64,000 nt of DNA from NCBI GenBank assembly GCA_964252035.1, contig OZ176205.1; one strand, written 5' to 3'. Numbering within the stretch: position 1 is the first letter of the stretch; every line of letters starts with the position of its first letter. The position numbers and the translations under genes were made by a program. Origin of the DNA: Podarcis erhardii (taxonomy: Eukaryota). A model generated the notes under the pieces. It searched no databases, was not told the origin of the DNA, and worked only from the letters and a program-made list of their open reading frames with translations. Below, one piece after another: positions 3,219-55,976 of the stretch.

Positions 3219-3346
3219 GAACCTCTAACTCTCCAGATGTTGCTGAACTACAAGTCCCATCACTACTAGCATTGTCCCTTCTTGCTGGAGTTGATGGGAG
3301 TTGTAGTTGTGGCAACATCTGAACTGCCAAAGGTTCCCATCACCTG
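3219..3346. mobile_element. Short hairpin-type MITE (also partial near 28125-28240, 39291-39440, 54213-54300)
   Basis: ctccagatgttgctgaactacaagtcccatca..tgatgggagttgtagtt..gcaacatctg..aggttccc, an internal inverted repeat. Confidence 0.65.
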
Positions 3347-21406: not shown

Positions 21407-22964
21407 GAAATTCTTTCCAGCAGTTGCAGTGTATGCATTTAACTTCTTTCTTCCTTTTTTGTGTGGAAATACTGTATACTGAATGAAGTGATCTCTTAAT
21501 CATGCATAACTTTTTCTGGATTGTGCAAAAATCATTCTAACTTTTATTTCCTCACTGTAGATTTCTGCTGTAAATCAATTAAACATTACAGCAAATCATA
21601 GTTAAGCAAGTTTAAGTGTGGATTTGTGTTTTGTCTGAACTGACAAACTGCGGTTTGTGACCAACCAACAAACCAGGATCAGAAGCTGTGCTTTGAAACA
21701 GGCTTGCAAACCATGTTTTGTGCTACCTGTGGTTTGGAGTTGTGTCTGAATTTATAAACCACAGTTTCCCCAACTTTGGAGGCCACTGTGCTCAGAGACA
21801 CAACTGCTGAGCTGGAAGGAAGGAAGGAATACAGAATTCAGTCATAAGCATGGAAAAGCCTGTTGGCCTGGATGAGACCCATTAGAATAAAGAATCATCA
21901 AAATAAAATAAAACGGGCAAATTCCCAGTATCTGCTGAGACCAAATTCCACACTGTCAATTTTCTTACTGAATTCCCATCTGGCAACTTCCTCTTAAAAC
22001 ATTTTTTTTTCTCTTGAAACATTTTTTTTAAGTACTGTAACCTTAAAGTTTGCTATAGAGTGCCTTGATGGACTAAAATGGACTCCTGTTGTTTTTTTAG
22101 AGTTACATTTTTGATGACCAATTTATCCTCTTCCACAGCAGATAACCATTTTGACATCTGTAAATGTTACAGGGATGCTATTGGCAGCTGATGGTGTATG
22201 CCACGTTGGAAGATGAGCAAGGGGACAAACTCTTGCTAGGACTCATATTGTAAAGTATCTATATAGTCCTACCTGGGTAGACAAGGTGACAGAGTTAGCA
22301 CACTAGTTTGTTGCAGGGTTTTATGTTTCTGCTGTAGCCCACCAGTATGTGGTAAATAGCCACTTCAGACTAGGGGGACTATTCATAAAGAAGAGCAGGC
22401 CCATCTCCAAATGGCCATGAGGGGGAAAGATCATCTCCCCAAATGAACTGCAGATACACTGAAGAGCTAAGAAATGCAGGTGACAAGTGGTGCCCTCTAA
22501 CTTTCTGTGCTGGGCCTGTCTTCCACATTCAGTGACTCCTGGGCGAACTACCCTCCAAGCCCTGTCAATCTGCTGCTGCCCGCCCCCACCCCTCCAGCAC
22601 ACACACACAATTCCCTGGTTGAGTACTGGATTTTAAGAATGCCTGGTGTAAATCCTGCAGGCATTGTTCTCTGTCAAAAGGACGGGCACAAATGCAGTGG
22701 TATCATAAGACTTGGCTTTAGGCAGTGGATCATGGGTGGGAAGAGGAAACAGGCAAACATTAAATCATAATATGGAAAGCCATGAGGCCTTTTTGGTCAA
22801 ACAATTTTCACAGAATGTCAACCCATGATGGACACATGCAGAACACACACAGTTCTGAAACACTGCCTCTGCCACACTTACAGCAGCTCTGTATGAAATC
22901 TCTACTATGCTAAGCTTTGACTCCTGTGTGTTGCTAGCTTGTGAATTTCGTTTCTTACACAAAG

Positions 22965-27728: not shown

Positions 27729-30700
27729 TAACAGTCACTTTATTCGTATCCCACTTTTCCAGCTGGCACACAGTCAAGCATGACAAATGCATCCACTAGA
27801 TCTCTGCATAACCAACAATTTGGTGAACAGTTGCATAATAATAAAAGTATAGAGTGCAATTCCCTCTGGCCTAGATGATAATTGGCAGGATAGCTAACAG
27901 GGCTCTCTCGGCTGGCAATAGTCCAGCTAAGACCAGGAGCAGAATGAGTGGCCCTGGTGAGGGAGAGGAGGTTAGTCCTTAGTCCCATATACCAACAGCA
28001 CAATGGGACTGACCCCGGGCACAGTGTTCATCATAAGGCACTTCTAAGCAGCAGCTTCCCTTGCTTTCCATGGCACAATAAGAAGGTATCAATCCCTTCA
28101 GACAGGGATGGAGAATCTGTGAACCTCCATAGGTGGTTGGACTCCAACTCCCATCAGCTCCAGCCAGCATGGCCAGTGCAGATGGATAAGTAGAGTTGGA
28201 GTCCAACAATGTCTGGAGAGGTTCCTCTTTCCTGCCTTGGGATATTCCCACACCCACAGTAGGAAGCGAGTCTGGACGTACTCTTTTTGCTGCTTGCAGT
28301 GAACAACTTAAGGCAATCTTCCATGGACACCCAACCTTCTCACTAAGTGGGCCTACAGTGGCAAGGAACTCTCTCCAATATGACATGGGGTATGTATATT
28401 ATGCAGAACCTTCCTTGAGCAGCTATTCTAGCACCATTTTCTTCTTTCTTTGAGTTGTCATGAGATATGGTGAACCTGGAGCCCAAGGGCTGTTTCTTCT
28501 AGATGAAATATATCCAAAATTTCCTCTCCTGGAGGTGGGGCCTTCAGCCTGGTGATCTGGCTGTATTTGGTAGGTCACGTCCATCCAGAATGCCCATCCA
28601 TCAGAAAGGGCTGGTCCATTGTTCTCCAATCCCTGTCAGCAATGTGGATCACTGGTTCCTCAACATGAGTTACAATGCCAGGGACCAGAAGCCATACACA
28701 ACTGCATCCTAGCCCTCTAGACACACCTATGAACAAGAACTACTAGCTACACTCACCTTCCTCCCAATAAATTGGTCTGAAATTTCTGAGTTCTGAAAAC
28801 ATGTCCAGCCCTTTGCTTAACTTCCAGACATGTATGAATGAGCCCCTATCAGTAAGCCAACAATGGTCAAATAAACAGACGTGGGAATGACTTTGCACCT
28901 CTCTTAATAGAGGACCGAATCAGGATTGCAAAGGAGGAAGATAGATTGCCATTTTTTTTTTTTTTACAGAGCTGGGCTAGGTTTAGGACAAGAAGAGACA
29001 ATGTGGTGACTTCCAAATGTTGTTGGACTGTGTCTCTCATTATCTCTGACCATTGGCCATGCTGGCTGGGACCAATGGAACCTGGAGTCCAGTAATAGCC
29101 ATAGGATACTCTGTGAGCTGCCCCTGGCCTAGAAGATGGTAAGTTGGTGTGTATGCTGGGGGAGCAGGGGTCAAAATTCTGGAACAGCAAAAGGGTTTCA
29201 GCAGATCTGATGTCAGGAGTTCAACAGCATAGGATCAACGGCATAGGCAGAGCTCTGCAAAGGAAAGTTGCCTAGGGCTGTCCTGTGCAAAAGCCCATCC
29301 CTCCAGGGATTAAAAATCCCACTCCTTACTTTTTACAACCCGAGGTTGGGTTCATCAATTAAAAACTGAAGTGCCGGTGGGGAAATTCCAGTCACTTTTC
29401 AGCAGTAATCATCTAATGCAGAATATGCTGCATTAGCAAGCTTTAAAAAGCCCAGGGAGCAGTGCATACAAGATGCCAGAGTGCTGTAAACACAACGGTG
29501 CCAACTCCCTTTAGCAGGAGGGAGGCCTTGGCCCTTGAGTTGATCAGAGAGAAAAGGGAAAACCAACACGTTTCCCTTACGACTTACAGCAAGCCCGCTG
29601 CAGGTAACAACAGCAAATAACTCAGTGTTGCTCAAGGTGTACAATGGAAAGGCTGTCATTAAAAATTAAAAGGGCATGGGACAGATGCAGTCCCAGCCTT
29701 AGCAATCTGCCAGCAATGTGAGATTCATTTCTGCATGTGGTACCTATTAGCTCAAGAGGGGGTTGCCTGCAGTCTCGTGGAGGGGAGATGATATTCCATT
29801 TTCCAGTATTATTTACCACTCCCAACCCTCACGCCATGGTGTAATTTGACTCTGGCTGGACACTGTAGGTGACCTGCTTCCCATGAGAACTTTTAACCTT
29901 TCATCCCAGGTCACCTGAATCTTCCCAGGACAAGATTCATTTATGTATTTATTTATTTTTTTAAGTTTTTACAACACCTTTCACGGAAGGGGGGGGAAGC
30001 CCTCTTGAGGCAGCTGACAAATAAAACATACAAAATATATAACACAATTCATTAAAAACAGCTACATTTCAAAACTTCTCCTGCTGCCTTCTTCATGTCC
30101 AATATATAGAACTTTGTCTTGGAACAGACCACACTTGAACTGTTAGCTCAGCTCTTGGCCAGTTTCCCTAAACTGATCACAGCAGTGCTTAATAAAACAC
30201 GATGAGTGTGAAAAGGCTAACACTGGAATTTATTTTTCTAAGTGAGAAAGGGATTAGCCTTAAAGTCCGATGCTGGCTGCAAGTTTGCCTCATCTGGCAA
30301 AATGCAAGCCTCTTCTTTTTGGGTCTTCCCCTATAAAACACAACTGTATTTAGCTGGGCACCTCCTAGGAGACATTTTCTTGACAGCAGAAGCAAGGAGG
30401 ATGCAGTTTAATCCTTCAAGCTCCTGGTTTTAGGGGCCTTCTTGATGGCTTTTAAACACTTGCTCTTGGCAGCCATGGTGTCACTGAGCACAGCACTTAA
30501 TCTTCTGTTTAACTTTAATCATGTGCTTTAGCTCCATTGAGTAAATGGGGCCTAATTCCCATGTTTAAATTAAATGCATGCTTAAGTAACTTCCTAAATG
30601 AGGACTGCTGTCATGAAGCAAGGCTTCTTTGATCTACAGTACCCTTTCAAATTAGTTACTCAGGGGCATATGTGGGGGGAATCTGCATTCCCCCATTTAG

Positions 30701-32435: not shown

Positions 32436-33442
32436 CTGCTGTGGCAGAGTCTTGCTTTAAGGACCCTATGGAACTGGACTGCCCACACGTGTCCAATATA
32501 TGATGGCAAAGCATAGTGGCCTGGCCACAGCACCCATCACTATTTGGATTCTTTCAGACAACCCAGTTCTGTGGGGACCTGAACCTATGGCAAGGTGGAA
32601 ATGGCCATCAGAAGAACCCACCTTGGGAAAACATATATTTGGTGCAAGGCCGGATGCTCAACACCAATGAATCCCTGGCAGGGAAGCGCAGAACTGTATT
32701 ACATGACATTTTGTGTTGCCCTTGCAACATGCACCTTTCTAATCTGACAGAGCTAACTGCTGGTATTACCCTGGATTGTGAGGCCAATATCAATTGTAAA
32801 GTAGCTTTCCTTTTCCTCTCTTTAGCTATTCTCCTTCCAAAGAGAGCAGTGCTTTCCCCTCCCCCCTGAATGACTCAGACAAGAGAGAAGCTGCCTAATG
32901 GTAAAAGACAAGCATCTGGTTCAATGCAAGGACGGTCATCATAATAAGCTATTGTTGAAGCATCAACACAAAAATTAGAAAAGATGCCCAGCTGTGCAGC
33001 TGGGTTGGAGCAAAGTAGCGTAGCCTTGGAAACATTTCCTGAGTATAGGACTTCAGACACAGTTAGACAGGCAGCCGCCTCTGGGCTAAGGCCTAATGAA
33101 AATAATGGATTGGCCTCCCTTCTCTAGGAAGAAAGCAACCCAAGCTTTGCCACTGCATTAGCTTTAAATACTCTTGCTCTTTTAGACTAGCCTTCCCCAA
33201 CCTGGTGCCCACTAGATGTTTTAGACTCCCATCAGCCCCAGACAACATAGCATTATCCAGAGAGTCACAGGTTTCCCACCCCAGCCACAGAGCGTTACAA
33301 TGGGCATACCAGGCAGGGGCTGGGGTCTTAGATGCTGACAGATGGACCGGTAATACTTCCTGGAGTCACAGCCCCCATGCATGTATCAAATAGCAAGCAA
33401 TGGAGGAAAGTAGCTTGTAATAGCTCCAGAGGCACATATCAC

Positions 33443-41448: not shown

Positions 41449-41496
41449 CATCCCCATTTACCTTTTACCTGCTGAACTATAACTCCCATCATCCCT

Positions 41497-42359
41497 GTTA
41501 CAGATAGGTAGCCGTGTTGGTCTGCCATGGTCAAAACAAAATAAAAAAATTCCTTCCAGTAGCACCTTAAAGACCAACTGAGTTAGTTCTAGGTATGAGC
41601 TTTCGTGTGCATGCACACTTCTTCAGATACACTGAAACAGAAGTCACCGGACCTTTCAATATAGTGAGAAGGTGGGGAGGGGTATTACTCAGAAGGGTGG
41701 TGGGAATGGGTGATTGGCAGATAGCTGCGATGAGCCTGTTGACGACTCTTAACGACTGCAATAGGTCTAACAGGAAAAAGCAAGGGGTGAGAAGGTGAAA
41801 AATGGCTTTGTCATGTATAATGAGATAAGAATCCAATGTCTTTATTCAAACCAGGTCTCTCCATAGTTTTAAGTTTGGTGATAAGTTGCAATTCAGCAGC
41901 TTCTCTTTCCAGTCTATTTCTGAAATTCCTTTGTAATAGAACAGCTACTTTGAGATCTTGTATAGAATGTCCTGGGAGATTGAAGTGTTCTCCTACTGGT
42001 TTTTCTGTCTTGTGGTTCCTGATGTCGGATTTATGTCCATTTATTCTTTGGCGTAAGGTCTGGCCTGTTTGTCCAATATAGAGAGCTGAAGGACACTGTT
42101 GGCATTTTATGGCATACACAATGTTAGACGATGAGCAATTAAATAGTCCCGAGATGGTATGTGTGATGTTGTTGGGGCCAGTAATGGTGTTGTCCGGGTG
42201 TATGTGGCAGCAAAGTTGGCATCTGGGTTTATTGCAGGCTCTGGTGCCAGTGTCCGTGTTAAGTCTGGTTATAGTATTATTGTGGGTTAGGAGTTGTTTA
42301 AGATTGGGGGGCTGTCTGGAGGCAATGAAAGGTCTTCCTCCTTTCATTGCCTCCAGACA
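41497..42359 (-). mobile_element. Penelope-like retroelement (Neptune-type), 5'-truncated copy 1 with terminal 20-bp fold-back
   Basis: Minus-strand frame 41811-42341 encodes RQPPNLKQLL..CNKPRCQLC (Cys-rich linker)..VYAIKCQQCPSALYIGQTG (GIY-YIG)..RINGH..HF..EREAAE..GLN. Followed by a 3' non-coding region with a hammerhead motif and a tail ending at 41497. Confidence 0.9.
41593..41630 (-). ncRNA. Minimal type-I hammerhead ribozyme motif (PLE copy 1)
   Basis: Same 38-nt motif, unchanged although the flanking sequence differs from copy 2. Confidence 0.75.
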
Positions 42360-42410
42360 CTGGCTGGGGCCAATGGGAGTTGGAGTCCAGCAATATCTGG
42401 AGAGCCACAA

Positions 42411-43409
42411 TCAAAACAAAAAAATTCCTTCCAGTAGCACCTTAAAGACCAACTAAGTCAGTTCTTGGTATGAGCTTTCGTGTGCATGCACACTTCTTCA
42501 GATACACTGAAACAGAAGTTTCCAGACCTTTCTATATAGTGAGAAGGTGGGGAGGGGTATTACTCAGAAGGGTGGTAGGAATGGGTGATTGGCAGATAGC
42601 TGTGATGAGCCTGTTGATGACTCTTAACGACTGCAATAGGTCTTACAGGAGGAAGCAAGGGGTGAAAAGGTGAAAAATGGCTTTGTCATGTATAATGAGA
42701 TAAGAATCCAAGGTCTTTGTTCAGGCCAGGTTTTTCCATGGTTTTAAGTTTGGTGATAAGTTGTAATTCAGCAGCTTCTCTTTCCAGTCTATTTCTGAAA
42801 TTCCTTTGTAGTAAAACAGCTACTTTGAGATCTTGTATAGAATGTCCTGGGAGATTGAAGTGTTCTCCTACTGGTTTCTCTGTCTTGTGATTCCTGATGT
42901 CCGATTTATGTCCGTTTATTCTTTGGCGTAAGGTCTGGCCTGTTTGTCCAATATAGAGAGCTGAAGGACACTGTTGGCATTTTATGGCATACACAATGTT
43001 AGACGATGAGCAATTAAATAGTCCCGAAATGGTATGTGTGATGTTGTTGGGGCCAGTAATGGTGTTGTCCGGGTGTATGTGGCAGCAAAGTTGGCATCTG
43101 GGTTTATTACAGGCTCTGGTGCCAGTGTCTGTGTTAGGTCTGGTTGTAGTATTATTGTGGGTTAGGAGTTGTTTAAGACTGGGTGGCTGTCTGTAGGCAA
43201 TGAAAGGTCTTCCTCCCAGAGCTTGAGAAAGAGAACTGTCATTGTCCAGGAGAGGTTGTAGATCTCTGATGATGCGTTGTACTGTTTTAACTTGGGAGCT
43301 GTATGTGATGACTAGAGGTGTTCTGTTATTTTCTTTTTTGGGTCTGTCTTGCAGCAAGTTCTCTCTGGGTATCAGTCTGGCTCTGTTGATCTGTTGTCTA
43401 ACTTCATCT
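42411..43409 (-). mobile_element. Penelope-like element copy 2, left arm of palindrome (RT-EN linker plus GIY-YIG endonuclease remnant, 3' region lacking the last 34 nt)
   Basis: Minus ORF DEVRQQINRAR..YIGQTG..GLNKDLGFLSHYT* (stop at 42686-42688). Mirror of the right arm: paired coordinates sum to 86812. Confidence 0.92.
42468..42505 (-). ncRNA. Minimal type-I hammerhead ribozyme motif (PLE left arm)
   Basis: Exact reverse complement of 44307-44344. Confidence 0.75.
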
Positions 43410-44435
43410 GTTAGACAACAGATCAACAGAGCCAGACTGATACCCAGAGAGAACTTGCTGCAAGACAGACCCAAAAAAGAAAATAACAGAACACCTCTAG
43501 TCATCACATACAGCTCCCAAGTTAAAACAGTACAACGCATCATCAGAGATCTACAACCTCTCCTGGACAATGACAGTTCTCTTTCTCAAGCTCTGGGAGG
43601 AAGACCTTTCATTGCCTACAGACAGCCACCCAGTCTTAAACAACTCCTAACCCACAATAATACTACAACCAGACCTAACACAGACACTGGCACCAGAGCC
43701 TGTAATAAACCCAGATGCCAACTTTGCTGCCACATACACCCGGACAACACCATTACTGGCCCCAACAACATCACACATACCATTTCGGGACTATTTAATT
43801 GCTCATCGTCTAACATTGTGTATGCCATAAAATGCCAACAGTGTCCTTCAGCTCTCTATATTGGACAAACAGGCCAGACCTTACGCCAAAGAATAAACGG
43901 ACATAAATCGGACATCAGGAATCACAAGACAGAGAAACCAGTAGGAGAACACTTCAATCTCCCAGGACATTCTATACAAGATCTCAAAGTAGCTGTTTTA
44001 CTACAAAGGAATTTCAGAAATAGACTGGAAAGAGAAGCTGCTGAATTACAACTTATCACCAAACTTAAAACCATGGAAAAACCTGGCCTGAACAAAGACC
44101 TTGGATTCTTATCTCATTATACATGACAAAGCCATTTTTCACCTTTTCACCCCTTGCTTCCTCCTGTAAGACCTATTGCAGTCGTTAAGAGTCATCAACA
44201 GGCTCATCACAGCTATCTGCCAATCACCCATTCCTACCACCCTTCTGAGTAATACCCCTCCCCACCTTCTCACTATATAGAAAGGTCTGGAAACTTCTGT
44301 TTCAGTGTATCTGAAGAAGTGTGCATGCACACGAAAGCTCATACCAAGAACTGACTTAGTTGGTCTTTAAGGTGCTACTGGAAGGAATTTTTTTGTTTTG
44401 ACTGTGGCAGACCAACACGGCTACCTATCTGTAAC
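43410..44435 (+). mobile_element. Penelope-like element copy 2, right arm of palindrome with complete 3' tail
   Basis: Plus ORF VRQQINRAR..GIY-YIG..SHYT* (43410-44126), then the 3' region, hammerhead motif and 34-nt tail to 44435. The 13-bp direct repeat tggagagccacaa lies at 42398-42410 and 44436-44448. Confidence 0.92.
44307..44344 (+). ncRNA. Minimal type-I hammerhead ribozyme motif (PLE right arm)
   Basis: GUAU-CUGAAGA-A-GUGUGCAUGCACAC-GAAA-GCUC|AUAC. Stem I is GUAU/AUAC, the core is CUGANGA and GAAA, and stem II is a palindrome. Predicted cleavage after C44340. Confidence 0.75.
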
Positions 44436-44679
44436 TGGAGAGCCACAAGTTAGCCACCCCTGCTGTAGAATCTATAAGAAAGCTTCCTAAAGAAAACTGA
44501 AAACTCCCCAGGCATGGTCACCATATGGAGGCACAGAGCTACACATTCTGCTAGCAAATGTGCAATTCCTAAACACACACCTGCCAGGTAAAATCAATAC
44601 AAAAGCAAGAGAGGGGTATTTGGCTAGTAGAAGCAGCAGTCAGTTCTCCATGGGAAACGCCCCCTGCAGTAGCAACATG

Positions 44680-44857
44680 CAGTGGCGTAGCATGGGGGTG
44701 CAGGGGGGGGCGGCCGCACCGGGCGCAACATCTGGGGGTTAGGGTTAGGGATAGGGTTAGGGGGTGCAAATCCAGGGTTAGGGGGCGCAAATCCAGGGTT
44801 AGGGGGCGCAAATTACTTGCCTTGCCCCGGGTGCTGACAACCCACGCTACGCCACTG
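44680..44857. mobile_element. hAT-type MITE containing TTAGGG repeats
   Basis: TIR cagtggcgtagc/gctacgccactg and a perfect 8-bp TSD gcaacatg (44672-44679, 44858-44865). Confidence 0.88.
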
Positions 44858-45864
44858 GCAACATGAGGAAAAGGGCTTCCCTTGGAAAATAATGCCCCAC
44901 GCTCAAAAGGAATGTTCCACACTCAAACAGGTCTAACACAACTCATGCTATTCTATTATAAGTATAAGTATATATTTTAAAGTAATAGTCATGTTTGAAT
45001 CTGGACTCTCGGTAAGCCTAGCTTATTCTCTGCAGCTGCAGCTTTGGCTTTGCTGTTTAAAACCTTTGCACCAGGGTAATGCTTGGAATGCATGAATAAT
45101 GTCCTGGAATTGCTGCTGTAACACTGCTGCCTAGGTTGGTTCAGCAGCCAGCAAATCCATCCCAAGTATTTATTTGCTGGCCCAGCAAGCCATAGGATCA
45201 GGTAGTAAAGCTCTGTAAACAAAATAAAGTAAAAACGGGTAGTGGAGAGAGCAGAGAATTTGAAGAAATGGTTTTGTTTTGTTTTTTACAAAAAACCAAT
45301 GTTGTCAGTTTCAAATGTGCATATATGCTTGTGTGTGCTCATGGAAACTAACCATTTTGTTTTTCTGTTTTGCTTGTCCAAGTTTACCCAAACTGGCCAT
45401 AGTACGGACATTAATCCTTCCAGGCTCCAGCATAGTACAGTGATTGTGGAGATTATTTCTATGGCTCTTCCTCTCTACCCCAGTCTTAATGTTTTATCAG
45501 TAGATGAGTTATGGTGCCTGGCCATGCTGTTACCATTTGAAATTATAGCCGCTACAGAAGACTGCAACATAGAATACAGTAGTACAAAACTAAGAGATTA
45601 CAGCCTTGCTACAGTATGTTACAGCTTACAGAAGGGAAGCTTGAAATAGGAATGCCCAGGCACCCTGATCCTTAAAAAGGTGTAGCTGCGACACAGAGTT
45701 GTACAGACAAGGGCAGAATGCACCTAGGTTGATGTAACAGCATTTGGTGCAAGATCAGCAGGGCACAAGGGATGGGGAACCTGTGGCTGACCACTGACCA
45801 TGCTAGATGGGGCCAACAGAAGATGGGGTCCCACAAAACCTGTAAGGTGCTGCCCTATATGTTT

Positions 45865-49045: not shown

Positions 49046-49381
49046 NNNNNNNNNNNNNNNNNNNNNNNNNNNNNNNNNNNNNNNNNNNNNNNNNNNNNNN
49101 NNNNNNNNNNNNNNNNNNNNNNNNNNNNNNNNNNNNNNNNNNNNNNNNNNNNNNNNNNNNNNNNNNNNNNNNNNNNNNNNNNNNNNNNNNNNNNNNNNNN
49201 NNNNNNNNNNNNNNNNNNNNNNNNNNNNNNNNNNNNNNNNNNNNNNNNNNNNNNNNNNNNNNNNNNNNNNNNNNNNNNNNNNNNNNNNNNNNNNNNNNNN
49301 NNNNNNNNNNNNNNNNNNNNNNNNNNNNNNNNNNNNNNNNNNNNNNNNNNNNNNNNNNNNNNNNNNNNNNNNNNNNNNNNN
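49046..49381. other. Assembly gap (336 N)
   Basis: Run of N. Confidence 1.
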
Positions 49382-53300: not shown

Positions 53301-54880
53301 ATGGAGATCATATATGCAGGAGGACCACTCCAGTTACACCAATCAAAAGTAGGCAACATTAGGCTAGAAGAACCATTATAAAGCCAACTTCGTAGGCCTT
53401 TCTGTGAACAGGAAGATTAAGTGAAAGGAAAATTCCAGCGGCTAAGCAAGTGGAAAACATGGCATGCTGCCGCCAAATCTGGGCCACTGCCTGAGAAGCT
53501 GAGGCCCTGAACAAACAGCTCCCAAACACCGGTGATATCCAGCCCAAATGCTAAACAGCTTTGATCTTTTACCAATCCTTTCTAAATCTTGAGCTGTGTC
53601 TTGTAAATCTTTAATTACAAGAAAATTGCAACCCTAACAGTGAACACACAAACTGTGTTGCTAAATATTTAAAATTGCTACAGCGACAGATCTGAAGGGA
53701 TTAGGAAAAGATATATTGGAGTGACAGTTATTAAACACTAAATCCCAGTAAATGTTACAGAGCAGATAAATAATGCAGGCCCCTGACAGCCATTCCGACG
53801 CTGACAGACCAGGAGAGACATCTGCTCTGGGGGGTGATTGGGGGAGGGGGCTGCAGGGCTGCTTGATGACTGACACCTCCAGAAGCACAGGTTTGTGTTT
53901 GCTGGGAAGGAGGGAGGGAGGGATGAGGTTTGGCGGAATAAAAAGGAAAGGAAAATGGCAGGCTCTGGAGCAAAGTGCAACTGGGTAAACGGTAACATTT
54001 TACAGACTCAAAATGAGTGCTGAAATACTTGAGCACCCTGCCTCTTTAACTGTGTGAGTGCAGGTGGGGAGAAGGGAGAAGAGAGGAGCAGTAGGCATTT
54101 CAGTCGTGAAAACCAACTTCAGAATTCTCATTGGTCCAGAACCAATGCTGGAACCAATGGAGCTGCATTACCCCAGGTCAACTTTGTTCACCTAGGCCAC
54201 TATTGTGTACTGCAAGTGTGGGAAACCTTTGGCCCTCCAGATGTTGCTGAACCGCAACTCCCACTATTCCTGGTCATTGACCATGCCCCAGCAAGCACTG
54301 ACCATGCCCACACCTAGACTACTGTGGCTGACAGCTGCTCTCCACAGCCTGCAATAGAGGACTTCCATGTCACCTGCAGCAACCCCACCAGAGACCATCT
54401 TCCTGCAAAGCATGCACTCTCCCACTGATGCATAGCCCCTCCCCATTCAGATATAATTAATAAGTTGCATCCTGCACATTAAAAATATTGCAAATTTTAA
54501 AAACAACAGTTGCAATCTTACTCATTATTATTAATTATATTTCTTATCTCCCACCCTTCTTCTCATGAGAGCCCGAGAGGGCTAACTACAAATGCAGAAC
54601 ATTAAAATCAAAGTAAAAGCACAGTAGGCAAGTCAACATTAAATTATACACATGCAAATGATGTCACTCTCATGATGCTCCAAAGGGTTTTTGAAAGCCT
54701 CGGAAGCTCATTAGCAGAGATCACTTTGGGTATATCAACACTGTGTGTGTGGTTGTGTGTACATTCCGCCACTTTAATTATTACATTCCCCCCCCCAAAA
54801 AAAAAAAAAAATCTGAAAATTGTAGTTTGGCCATGTTGAGAGATCTCTTTAAAAAGTCTGTAACTCCTACCTTACCATTT

Positions 54881-55506: not shown

Positions 55507-55976
55507 TATATTTCAAGACTCACCCTATTTTACGTGACTGCATGTTGTTGTTTTTATAATTGTAAGTTTTAAAAATTGTTTCTAAGTATTTTAGTGTTTC
55601 TAACATTGTATTGTTGTAACCCACCCTGGGATCTTAGGGTGAAGGGCAGTTAAATAGTGCCGTTATTGTTACTCAATCATCTGACTTTGTCTGGTGGCCC
55701 TAAATGAAATTTCAGAGAATTATACCAAGAGAGAGTGCAATCAAACCATGGTTTCTTGAAAGTACATTTGATTCTAAAGGACATATCAAACCTCTAATGC
55801 ATGCGTTTTACTTCAGACAACAGTATGGGGATGGAGAAATGGTGCCCCTCCAGATTCTGTTGGACTCCCAGCTCCCATCATCTTTGAACATTTGCCTTGT
55901 TTGAGCCCAACAACACCTGAAATATCATGTATTCCCAATCCCTAATATTACAAAAAAAGAGAGGTAGCTATTACAG

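What the first reader, a model, noticed from the sequence alone, without database searches (positions are those of the whole stretch)
42398..44448. 2-kb apparently perfect palindrome made of a Penelope-like retroelement, inserted as one unit
Seen: 42411-43402 is the reverse complement of 43410-44401 (992-bp arms, 7-nt spacer ttcatct). ORFs in several frames translate identically on both arms, and I found no mismatch in the parts I compared by eye. A 13-bp direct repeat (tggagagccacaa) flanks the whole structure. Known: inverted arrangements occur in Penelope-like elements, and near-spacerless long palindromes are unstable and form cruciforms. Inference: this is a very young, single integration of a fold-back PLE DNA, which implies a hairpin intermediate rather than ordinary TPRT.
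Basis: partly seen in the sequence, partly recalled or inferred. Interest (0 to 1): 0.85.

Follow-up and report, generated by a model that had tools for sequence, protein, structure and literature searches.

The report
Head-to-head Penelope retroelement insertion palindrome
A lizard genome holds a recent insertion of a Penelope-like jumping gene laid down as two mirror-image 992-base halves; this layout is a known signature of the element class, so it is an unusually clean, readable example and not a new kind of thing.

Summary
Arms 42411-43402 and 43410-44401 are exact reverse complements (992 nt, 0 mismatches) around the 7-nt spacer TTCATCT. An exact 13-bp direct repeat flanks the unit. Paralogous copies of the flanking repeat carry that 13-mer once, so it is a true target-site duplication.

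The arms are the 3' third of a Penelope-like element (PLE): GIY-YIG endonuclease end plus pLTR-like tail region.

- The right arm runs on for 34 nt (44402-44435) of element sequence before the TSD. This matches the published one-sided PLE "tail".
- The 7-nt spacer is native coding sequence of the left-arm copy.

So both outer ends look like reverse-transcription start junctions, one with the tail and one without. This fits in vitro work on an anole PLE, which cuts and extends both target strands and starts at two sites about 34 nt apart. The centre is a turn-around of the top-strand-primed cDNA.

Head-to-head inverted PLE copies, tails and self-priming proposals are already published. This scan has noted many such palindromes in the same genome on other DNA.

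The read check was inconclusive: only short-read contigs were available, and none shown spans the structure. Verdict: real, young, single insertion; a new member of a known kind; modest mechanistic value.

The parts
42398..42410 (.). Left copy of the 13-bp target-site duplication tggagagccacaa. On my reading its 3' end is the top-strand primer.
   Evidence: (family D11). Paralogous repeat copies have it once.
42404..42409 (+). 6-nt microhomology: gccaca of the target complements tgtggc (44403-44408), the element letters just 3' of where the left arm starts.
   Evidence: Chance of 6 or more of 7 matching at a fixed register is about 0.0014.
42411..43402 (-). Left arm: PLE 3' part (element sense on the - strand). 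It starts at the tail-less boundary and is exactly complementary to the right arm.
   Evidence: Its ORF 42686-43570 (-) gives the same protein as the right arm.
43403..43409 (-). 7-nt spacer. On the - strand it reads GAT GAA (Asp-Glu) in frame before VRQQINRAR. It is native element sequence belonging to the left-arm copy.
   Evidence: Relatives have (A/E/V)E before V(K/R)(K/Q)Q; the closest, Podarcis P0034, has EEVKQQ. Contigs of other copies run from the left arm to 43407/43408/43410 (records 20 and 29, loose ends in X1).
43410..44401 (+). Right arm: the same PLE segment in sense orientation. It holds the ORF remnant 43410-44126 with the GIY-YIG domain, then about 275 nt of pLTR-like 3' region.
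   Evidence: (PF01541, E 7.4e-06, above its cut-off).
44402..44435 (+). 34-nt 'tail': element sequence present only on the right arm, ending the element at ...ctgtaac.
   Evidence: 32/34 identical to the 3' end of the neighbouring older copy (41497-41530, - strand). Length and one-sidedness match the published PLE tail (PMC8557442, PMC3846280, PMC11167929).
44436..44448 (.). Right copy of the 13-bp TSD. On my reading its complement is the bottom-strand primer.
44311..44340 (+). Hammerhead-like motif CTGAAGA-A-GTGTGCATGCACAC-GAAA-GCTC, read by eye. A mirrored copy lies at 42472-42501 (-) and another in the older copy at about 41597-41626 (-). A tatata box lies about 35 nt upstream.
   Evidence: Pattern found three times. 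No Rfam hammerhead match even at E up to 10, so this is a motif, not a shown ribozyme.
41497..42359 (-). Neighbouring older copy of the same family (94.9% identical), with tail and with its own small fold-back: 20-nt arms 42313-42332 / 42340-42359 around a 7-nt loop tcttcct that is native antisense sequence.
   Evidence: (I2, I5).
42360..42397 (+). Left flank: part of a dispersed short repeat (R) into which the palindrome inserted. It continues at 44449-44475.

Best explanation
This is a genuine, recent, single insertion of a 5'-truncated Penelope-like element, laid down head-to-head.

Shown:
- Perfect 992-nt arms.
- A true 13-bp TSD.
- PLE identity of the sequence.
- A 34-nt tail on the right arm only.
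- A spacer that is native to the left-arm copy.

Inferred:
1. The element's endonuclease cut both target strands 13 bp apart.
2. The bottom-strand 3' end primed reverse transcription at the outer start site, so the tail is included next to TSD2.
3. The top-strand 3' end (…gccacaa), helped by 6 nt of pairing with the RNA, primed at the inner start site 34 nt upstream. That gives the tail-less left arm next to TSD1.
4. The top-strand cDNA ran about 1 kb to 7-8 nt beyond the arm end and then turned round, with a 1-nt terminal pairing (g 43410 with c 43402). The turn was one of two things: a snap-back on itself, later switching onto the short bottom-strand tail cDNA; or cross-priming with the 3' end of a long bottom-strand cDNA following it on the same RNA.
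5. Each strand was then completed on the other.

Both outer junctions are therefore '3'-type' start junctions, and the two 5' truncation points meet in the middle.
For: - Exact arms, spacer and TSD.
- The 13-mer occurs once in paralogous R copies, which run straight on into the right-flank sequence.
- GIY-YIG domain. Lizard and turtle relatives whose longer models carry RVT_1 upstream of the homologous region.
- The tail is present at 44402-44435 and at the older copy's end, and absent from the left arm.
- The tail lies 62-95 nt after the predicted hammerhead cut (44340/44341). In the anole PAc element the about 34-nt tail spans nt 85-119 with the cut at +26, that is 59-93 nt after it: PMC11167929 text and Fig. 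S2 legend.
- PAc cuts and extends both strands and starts RT at two sites that bound the tail.
- The spacer read on the - strand gives Asp-Glu, matching the conserved xE before V(K/R)xQ in relatives. Read on the + strand it gives Ser-Ser.
- Microhomology at the left junction.
- The neighbouring copy shows the same kind of turn-around with a 7-nt native loop and 2-nt terminal pairing.
- Head-to-head inverted copies with a one-sided tail are the published PLE norm.
- Lead only: AI notes list many palindromic PLE insertions with 12-16-bp TSDs in this genome.
Against: - No read or independent contig was shown to span the centre or both arms (exact-ORF look-ups blank), so the structure rests on one assembly.
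- The two start sites are inferred by analogy with a different PLE family (PAc). In this window they rest on only three element ends.
- Zero mismatches could partly reflect polishing or arm-to-arm gene conversion, so youth is an upper-bound argument.
- The data do not separate self snap-back from cross-priming between two cDNAs.
Confidence: 0.7

Rival explanations
1. Single-primer hairpin: one target-primed cDNA folds back, copies itself completely, and the hairpin DNA is integrated as a unit without a second priming event.
For: The perfect arm identity and tiny spacer are what self-copying gives. The neighbouring copy shows a small fold-back (I5). Self-priming has been proposed for PLEs (PMC3846280).
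Against: The spacer is native to the left arm, so the folding strand is the tail-less one. A copy of it cannot contain the 34-nt tail found on the right arm; it would run into an inverted copy of the TSD and left flank instead, and 44402 is c where that would give t. A separate template carrying the tail next to TSD2 is required.
Confidence: 0.1
2. Later inverted duplication: an ordinary one-arm insertion (43410-44435 with its TSD) was copied backwards next to itself by a replication template switch, unrelated to retrotransposition.
For: Fold-back inverted duplications with short spacers and 1-2-nt microhomology occur in host DNA. An AI note reports one in this genome (s1-232452; unchecked).
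Against: The copied segment would have to stop exactly at the tail boundary and land exactly against the left TSD copy. The spacer would then be expected to be native to the original right-arm copy, not the left one. The same layout recurs with TSDs at many PLE insertions (literature; AI notes).
Confidence: 0.08
3. Assembly artefact: a chimeric fold-back long read or a mis-join created or lengthened the palindrome, and polishing made the arms identical.
For: No spanning read evidence was obtained. PLE inverted structures are known to trouble assemblies (PMC8557442). A gap lies 4.6 kb away (49046-49381). In the best-holding run, a contig covering the right flank departs from the window exactly at 44435 (record 16).
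Against: The palindrome is internal and has unique flanks on both sides that together form one continuous repeat copy with a duplicated 13-mer. An artefact would not produce a TSD, a one-sided tail at the published boundary, or a left arm ending at the other boundary. The record-16 observation fits a second, empty allele as well.
Confidence: 0.07

Closest known systems
Head-to-head inverted PLE insertions with pLTRs and a one-sided 30-40-bp tail (Evgen'ev & Arkhipova 2005; Arkhipova et al. 2013, PMC3846280; Craig et al. 2021, PMC8557442)
   Same: An inverted 5'-truncated copy adjoins the 5' end of another copy. The whole unit lies inside one TSD. A 34-nt extension is present at one end only. 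There is a palindromic junction, and the sequence is the GIY-YIG and pLTR region.
   Different: Here there is no full-length or tandem copy. Both arms are the same 5'-truncated segment, truncated within 7 nt of each other, and they are perfectly identical, so the whole insertion is one palindrome.
PAc (Poseidon_Ac, Anolis carolinensis) in vitro TPRT (Frangieh et al. 2024, PMC11167929)
   Same: Both target strands are used. Two RT start sites lie about 34 nt apart and bound the tail. The position of the tail relative to the hammerhead cut is nearly the same (62-95 nt here, 59-93 nt in PAc).
   Different: It is a different PLE family: by reading, the endonuclease region bears little likeness to the PAc protein in File S1 (no alignment run). 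The target here is not AT-rich (ctggagagccacaag). There are 6 nt of primer-template pairing at one junction, whereas the paper reports none. The paper does not derive inverted copies from its findings.
L1 twin priming, 5' inversion (Ostertag & Kazazian 2001; from my own knowledge)
   Same: The second target strand primes reverse transcription on the element RNA, giving an inverted 5' portion inside one TSD.
   Different: Twin priming joins two different, neighbouring segments of the element, one of them inverted. Here both arms are the same segment, and the second priming is at a defined site near the 3' end, not at a random internal site.
Snap-back (hairpin-primed) second-strand synthesis and template jumping by reverse transcriptases (classical cDNA cloning; R2 template jumps; from my own knowledge)
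   Same: A cDNA 3' end turns back with a short loop and minimal terminal pairing (1-2 nt here) and copies DNA.
   Different: Here the product ends up integrated in a chromosome with a TSD, and it needs a second, target-primed piece to supply the tail.

Membership tests
Penelope-like elements (EN+ PLE) | C-terminal GIY-YIG endonuclease domain in the element ORF | tested here: met
   PF01541 at residues 136-188 of the 238-aa arm ORF, E 7.4e-06, 26.6 bits against a cut-off of 22.6. Cys-rich block upstream.
Penelope-like elements (EN+ PLE) | PLE/telomerase-like reverse transcriptase upstream in the same ORF | tested here: inconclusive
   This copy is truncated after the RT. Relatives at 60-65% identity (P0029, P0007) have RVT_1 N-terminal to the homologous region. 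The PLE-type phylogeny of that RT was not tested.
Penelope-like elements (EN+ PLE) | Direct or inverted repeat arrangement of copies inside one TSD | tested here: met
   Inverted pair inside a 13-bp TSD.
Penelope-like elements (EN+ PLE) | Optional 30-40-bp tail at one end of the unit | tested here: met
   34 nt at 44402-44435 on the right arm only. The same sequence ends the neighbouring copy.
Penelope-like elements (EN+ PLE) | Hammerhead ribozyme motif in the pLTR | tested here: inconclusive
   CTGAAGA...GAAA motif with a palindromic stem II is present in all three copies. No Rfam hammerhead hit at E up to 10. There is an extra A in the core. Cleavage was not tested.
Poseidon_Ac (PAc) family of Anolis | Sequence identity to the Poseidon_Ac consensus | not tested
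   The consensus was read in File S1. By eye the endonuclease region differs strongly.
L1-type twin-priming inversion | Inverted and direct parts are different, adjoining segments of the element | tested here: not met
   Both arms are the same segment, 992/992 identical.

The most novel reading that the evidence does not exclude
Insertions like this one may be the in vivo footprint of a distinct 'double target-primed' pathway. A dimeric PLE particle would prime from both cut strands at two start sites 34 nt apart on one RNA, with two polymerases running in tandem. When the trailing one catches the leading one, their cDNA 3' ends cross-prime, giving a finished duplex without any host second-strand synthesis. 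This would explain head-to-head copies and one-sided tails in a single scheme. It predicts that the spacer is always native to the tail-less arm.
Probability: 0.25. Interest if true: 0.6.

Novelty: new member of a known kind. Interest (0 to 1): 0.33.

Why it matters
How Penelope-like elements integrate, and why they leave tandem or inverted copies and tails, is still called undefined in the literature (PMC8557442). The only biochemical study (PMC11167929) stops before second-strand synthesis.

A pristine insertion in which every junction can be read to the base gives testable rules for a genome-wide census and for in vitro assays:
- two start-type outer junctions;
- a tail on one arm;
- a spacer native to the other arm;
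- 1-2-nt terminal pairing at the turn.

Practically, such perfect kilobase palindromes are a hazard for assembly. They could form cruciforms, or long double-stranded RNA if transcribed through, so it is useful to know that they are common young insertions in this lizard.

Tried and rejected
- **Reads.** The only read-laying run returned Logan short-read contigs. The family is so abundant (tens of thousands of pieces laid per run) that no piece spanning the centre, a whole arm or an empty site was listed. Depth figures are per contig and not usable as copy number. The result is inconclusive for assembly truth and for presence or absence in relatives.
- **Exact-product look-ups.** Look-ups of the two ORFs that cross the centre found nothing.
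- **Rfam.** It gave only sub-threshold miRNA-like hits, caused by the hairpin itself, and no hammerhead. The miRNA hits are rejected as artefacts of any long inverted repeat.
- **RNA folding of the 3' region 44340-44435.** The fold is no better than shuffles (z -0.25), so I make no claim of a conserved 'AC-rich stem-loop' here.
- **A fixed 7-nt loop rule.** Rejected as a general rule, because AI notes list spacers of 0-70 nt elsewhere in this genome (unchecked).
- **Membership in the PAc family.** Considered and set aside.

Full report
**1. Observation**

- The window holds an exact inverted repeat. Positions 42411-43402 pair with 43410-44401 (992 nt, no mismatch) around the spacer TTCATCT at 43403-43409.
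- The repeat finder reports 999 nt. This is only because six bases of the left flank (gccaca, 42404-42409) happen to complement tgtggc at 44403-44408, across a mismatch at 42410/44402.
- The 13-mer tggagagccacaa is exact at 42398-42410 and at 44436-44448.
- As single-stranded DNA, the central 201 nt fold into a perfect hairpin (-122.5 kcal/mol, z -29.8).

**2. [quoted passage not shown]

- Read outward from the centre, each arm encodes the same 238 residues and then a stop.
- These residues carry a GIY-YIG domain above Pfam's cut-off.
- The nearest proteins in public data are unnamed gene models of lacertid lizards (82-84% identity) and turtles (about 60-65%).
- Longer turtle models have a reverse-transcriptase domain upstream of the homologous region.
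- An RT followed by a C-terminal GIY-YIG domain is the hallmark of endonuclease-bearing PLEs (PMC8557442, PMC11167929).
- The last 300 nt of each arm hold a tatata box and a hammerhead-like motif (CTGAAGA, a palindromic stem, GAAA, GCTC), found three times in the window. Rfam does not recognise it, so I call it a motif only.
- The family is very abundant in the eight related organisms whose runs hold it: tens of thousands of contig pieces were laid per run.
- The window has one more copy at 41497-42341 on the minus strand, 94.9% identical.
- A much older, divergent PLE fragment lies at 21919-22756.

**3. One insertion with a true target-site duplication**

- The left flank, one 13-mer and the right flank together form one continuous copy of a short dispersed repeat.
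- Four other copies of that repeat in the window run straight through the homologous place with the 13-mer present once.
- These serve as paralogous empty sites, so the 13-mer was duplicated when the 2,025-bp unit (42411-44435) went in.

**4. The unit is asymmetric in two informative ways**

*The tail.* The 34 nt at 44402-44435 are element sequence.
- They match the 3' end of the neighbouring older copy at 32 of 34 positions, and both copies end at ...ctgtaac.
- A 30-40-bp 'tail' at only one end of an inverted PLE unit is a published peculiarity of the class (PMC3846280, PMC8557442).
- In the anole element PAc the tail is about 34 nt and is the stretch between two reverse-transcription start sites (PMC11167929).
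- Counted from the predicted hammerhead cut, the tail here spans nt 62-95. In PAc it spans about nt 59-93.
- So the right arm ends at the outer start site and the left arm ends at the inner one.

*The spacer.* The 7-nt spacer belongs to the left-arm copy.
- On the minus strand it reads GAT GAA, giving Asp-Glu in frame before VRQQINRAR.
- Relatives have Ala/Glu/Val-Glu there, and the closest one (Podarcis) has Glu-Glu-Val-Lys-Gln-Gln.
- On the plus strand it would read Ser-Ser.
- Contigs of other copies in three genomes also run from the left arm into the spacer, up to 43407, 43408 or 43410.

**5. Mechanism (inferred)**

- On the plus strand the order is: TSD, antisense copy from the inner start site, 7 more native bases, a turn, the sense copy, the tail, TSD.
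- The strand that turned is therefore the cDNA primed by the top-strand 3' end.
- A copy of that strand cannot contain the tail. The tail next to the right TSD therefore needs a second cDNA, primed by the bottom strand at the outer start site.
- So both outer junctions are start junctions, and both target strands primed. This is what purified PAc does in vitro: it cleaves and extends both strands, unlike R2 and L1.
- The top-strand end (...gccacaa) can pair over 6 nt with the RNA just 3' of the inner site (chance about 0.0014 at that register). This may have helped priming, or it may be coincidence.
- At the centre the last base before the turn (g, 43410) can pair with c at 43402, which closes a 7-nt loop.

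I cannot tell apart two versions of the centre:
- **(a) Snap-back.** The top-strand cDNA snaps back on itself and copies 992 nt. It then switches onto a bottom-strand cDNA that stalled after 34 nt.
- **(b) Cross-priming.** Two polymerases run in tandem on one RNA. The leading, tail-less one ends 7 nt ahead, and the two 3' ends cross-prime.

Both versions predict that the spacer is native to the tail-less arm, as observed.

The neighbouring older copy shows that turning back is a habit of this element. Its cDNA strand runs 7 native bases (tcttcct) past the turn, pairs by 2 nt and copies 20 nt (42313-42332 / 42340-42359). The equal loop length may be chance, since AI notes list spacers from 0 to 70 nt elsewhere in this genome.

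**6. Rivals**

- *Later inverted duplication of a simple insertion.* It would have to stop exactly at the tail boundary against the TSD, and it would put the native spacer on the wrong arm.
- *Assembly artefact.* It would not make a TSD, a one-sided tail or an arm ending at the inner boundary. But I could not obtain spanning reads, so a small probability remains.
- *A loose end.* In the best-holding run, a 286-nt contig matches 44435-44704 perfectly, yet its last 16 letters do not lie on the tail (record 16). Position 44435 is the first base that a filled and an empty site share. That sample may therefore also carry an empty allele, but the letters were not shown.

**7. Age**

- There are no differences in 992 paired sites and the TSD copies are identical.
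- At 1e-9 substitutions per site per year, this bounds the age at about 1.5 million years.
- The rate is an assumption from general knowledge. Arm-to-arm conversion or polishing could hide differences, so this is only an upper bound.

**8. Comparison with what is known, and novelty**

- Already published: head-to-head inverted 5'-truncated copies, one-sided tails, palindromes at the inverted junction and a self-priming proposal (PMC3846280, PMC8557442); dual-strand extension and two start sites (PMC11167929).
- This scan has already reported the same kind of palindromic PLE insertion on other DNA of the same genome (for example s1-229643 and s1-254797) and judged it a known signature. I agree.
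- This locus adds a base-by-base reading that ties the one-sided tail and the native spacer to priming from both strands, and that yields a testable rule.
- That is a modest contribution: a new member of a known kind.

Noticed in passing
window 41497-42359: An older copy of the same PLE family (94.9% identical, with tail) ends in a 20-nt fold-back around a 7-nt loop of native sequence. It sits at the apex between two inverted halves of the short repeat R (41470-41496 and 42360-42410), with no evident TSD.
   Followed up: partly
window 44672-44865: A 178-bp element with 17-bp terminal inverted repeats (cagtggcgtagcatggg / cccacgctacgccactg) and an 8-bp TSD gcaacatg looks like a hAT-type MITE. 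It holds TTAGGG-like units and a 21-nt tandem repeat. A contig of a related organism (X18, record 23) skips exactly 44672-44857, which is an empty site in a relative.
   Followed up: partly
window 28103-28220, 54208-54263, 55828-55878, 3229-3260, 33249-33285, 29062-29097: Copies of a short dispersed repeat (core atgggagttggagtccagcaacatctggagggccacaggtt) often occur as inverted pairs, in a hairpin-MITE-like layout. Both PLE copies landed in one such unit.
   Followed up: partly
window 21919-22756 (-): An old, divergent PLE fragment, 30-37% amino-acid identity to turtle PLE gene models.
   Followed up: no
window 44435-44704: In the best-holding run (X15), a 286-nt contig matches this stretch perfectly but leaves the window at 44435, the first base shared by a filled and an empty site. 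This may be a sign that the insertion is heterozygous or polymorphic.
   Followed up: no
proteins P0008, P0011, P0012, P0029, P0042: Several turtle and gecko gene models named after host genes (endothelin-3, MVB12B, copper uptake protein 1, KIAA0930 homolog, CD94-like) contain this PLE's endonuclease region. These are likely annotation chimeras or exonised PLE fragments.
   Followed up: no
window 49046-49381: A run of 336 N (gap or masked stretch) lies 4.6 kb downstream of the palindrome. It was left untouched.
   Followed up: no
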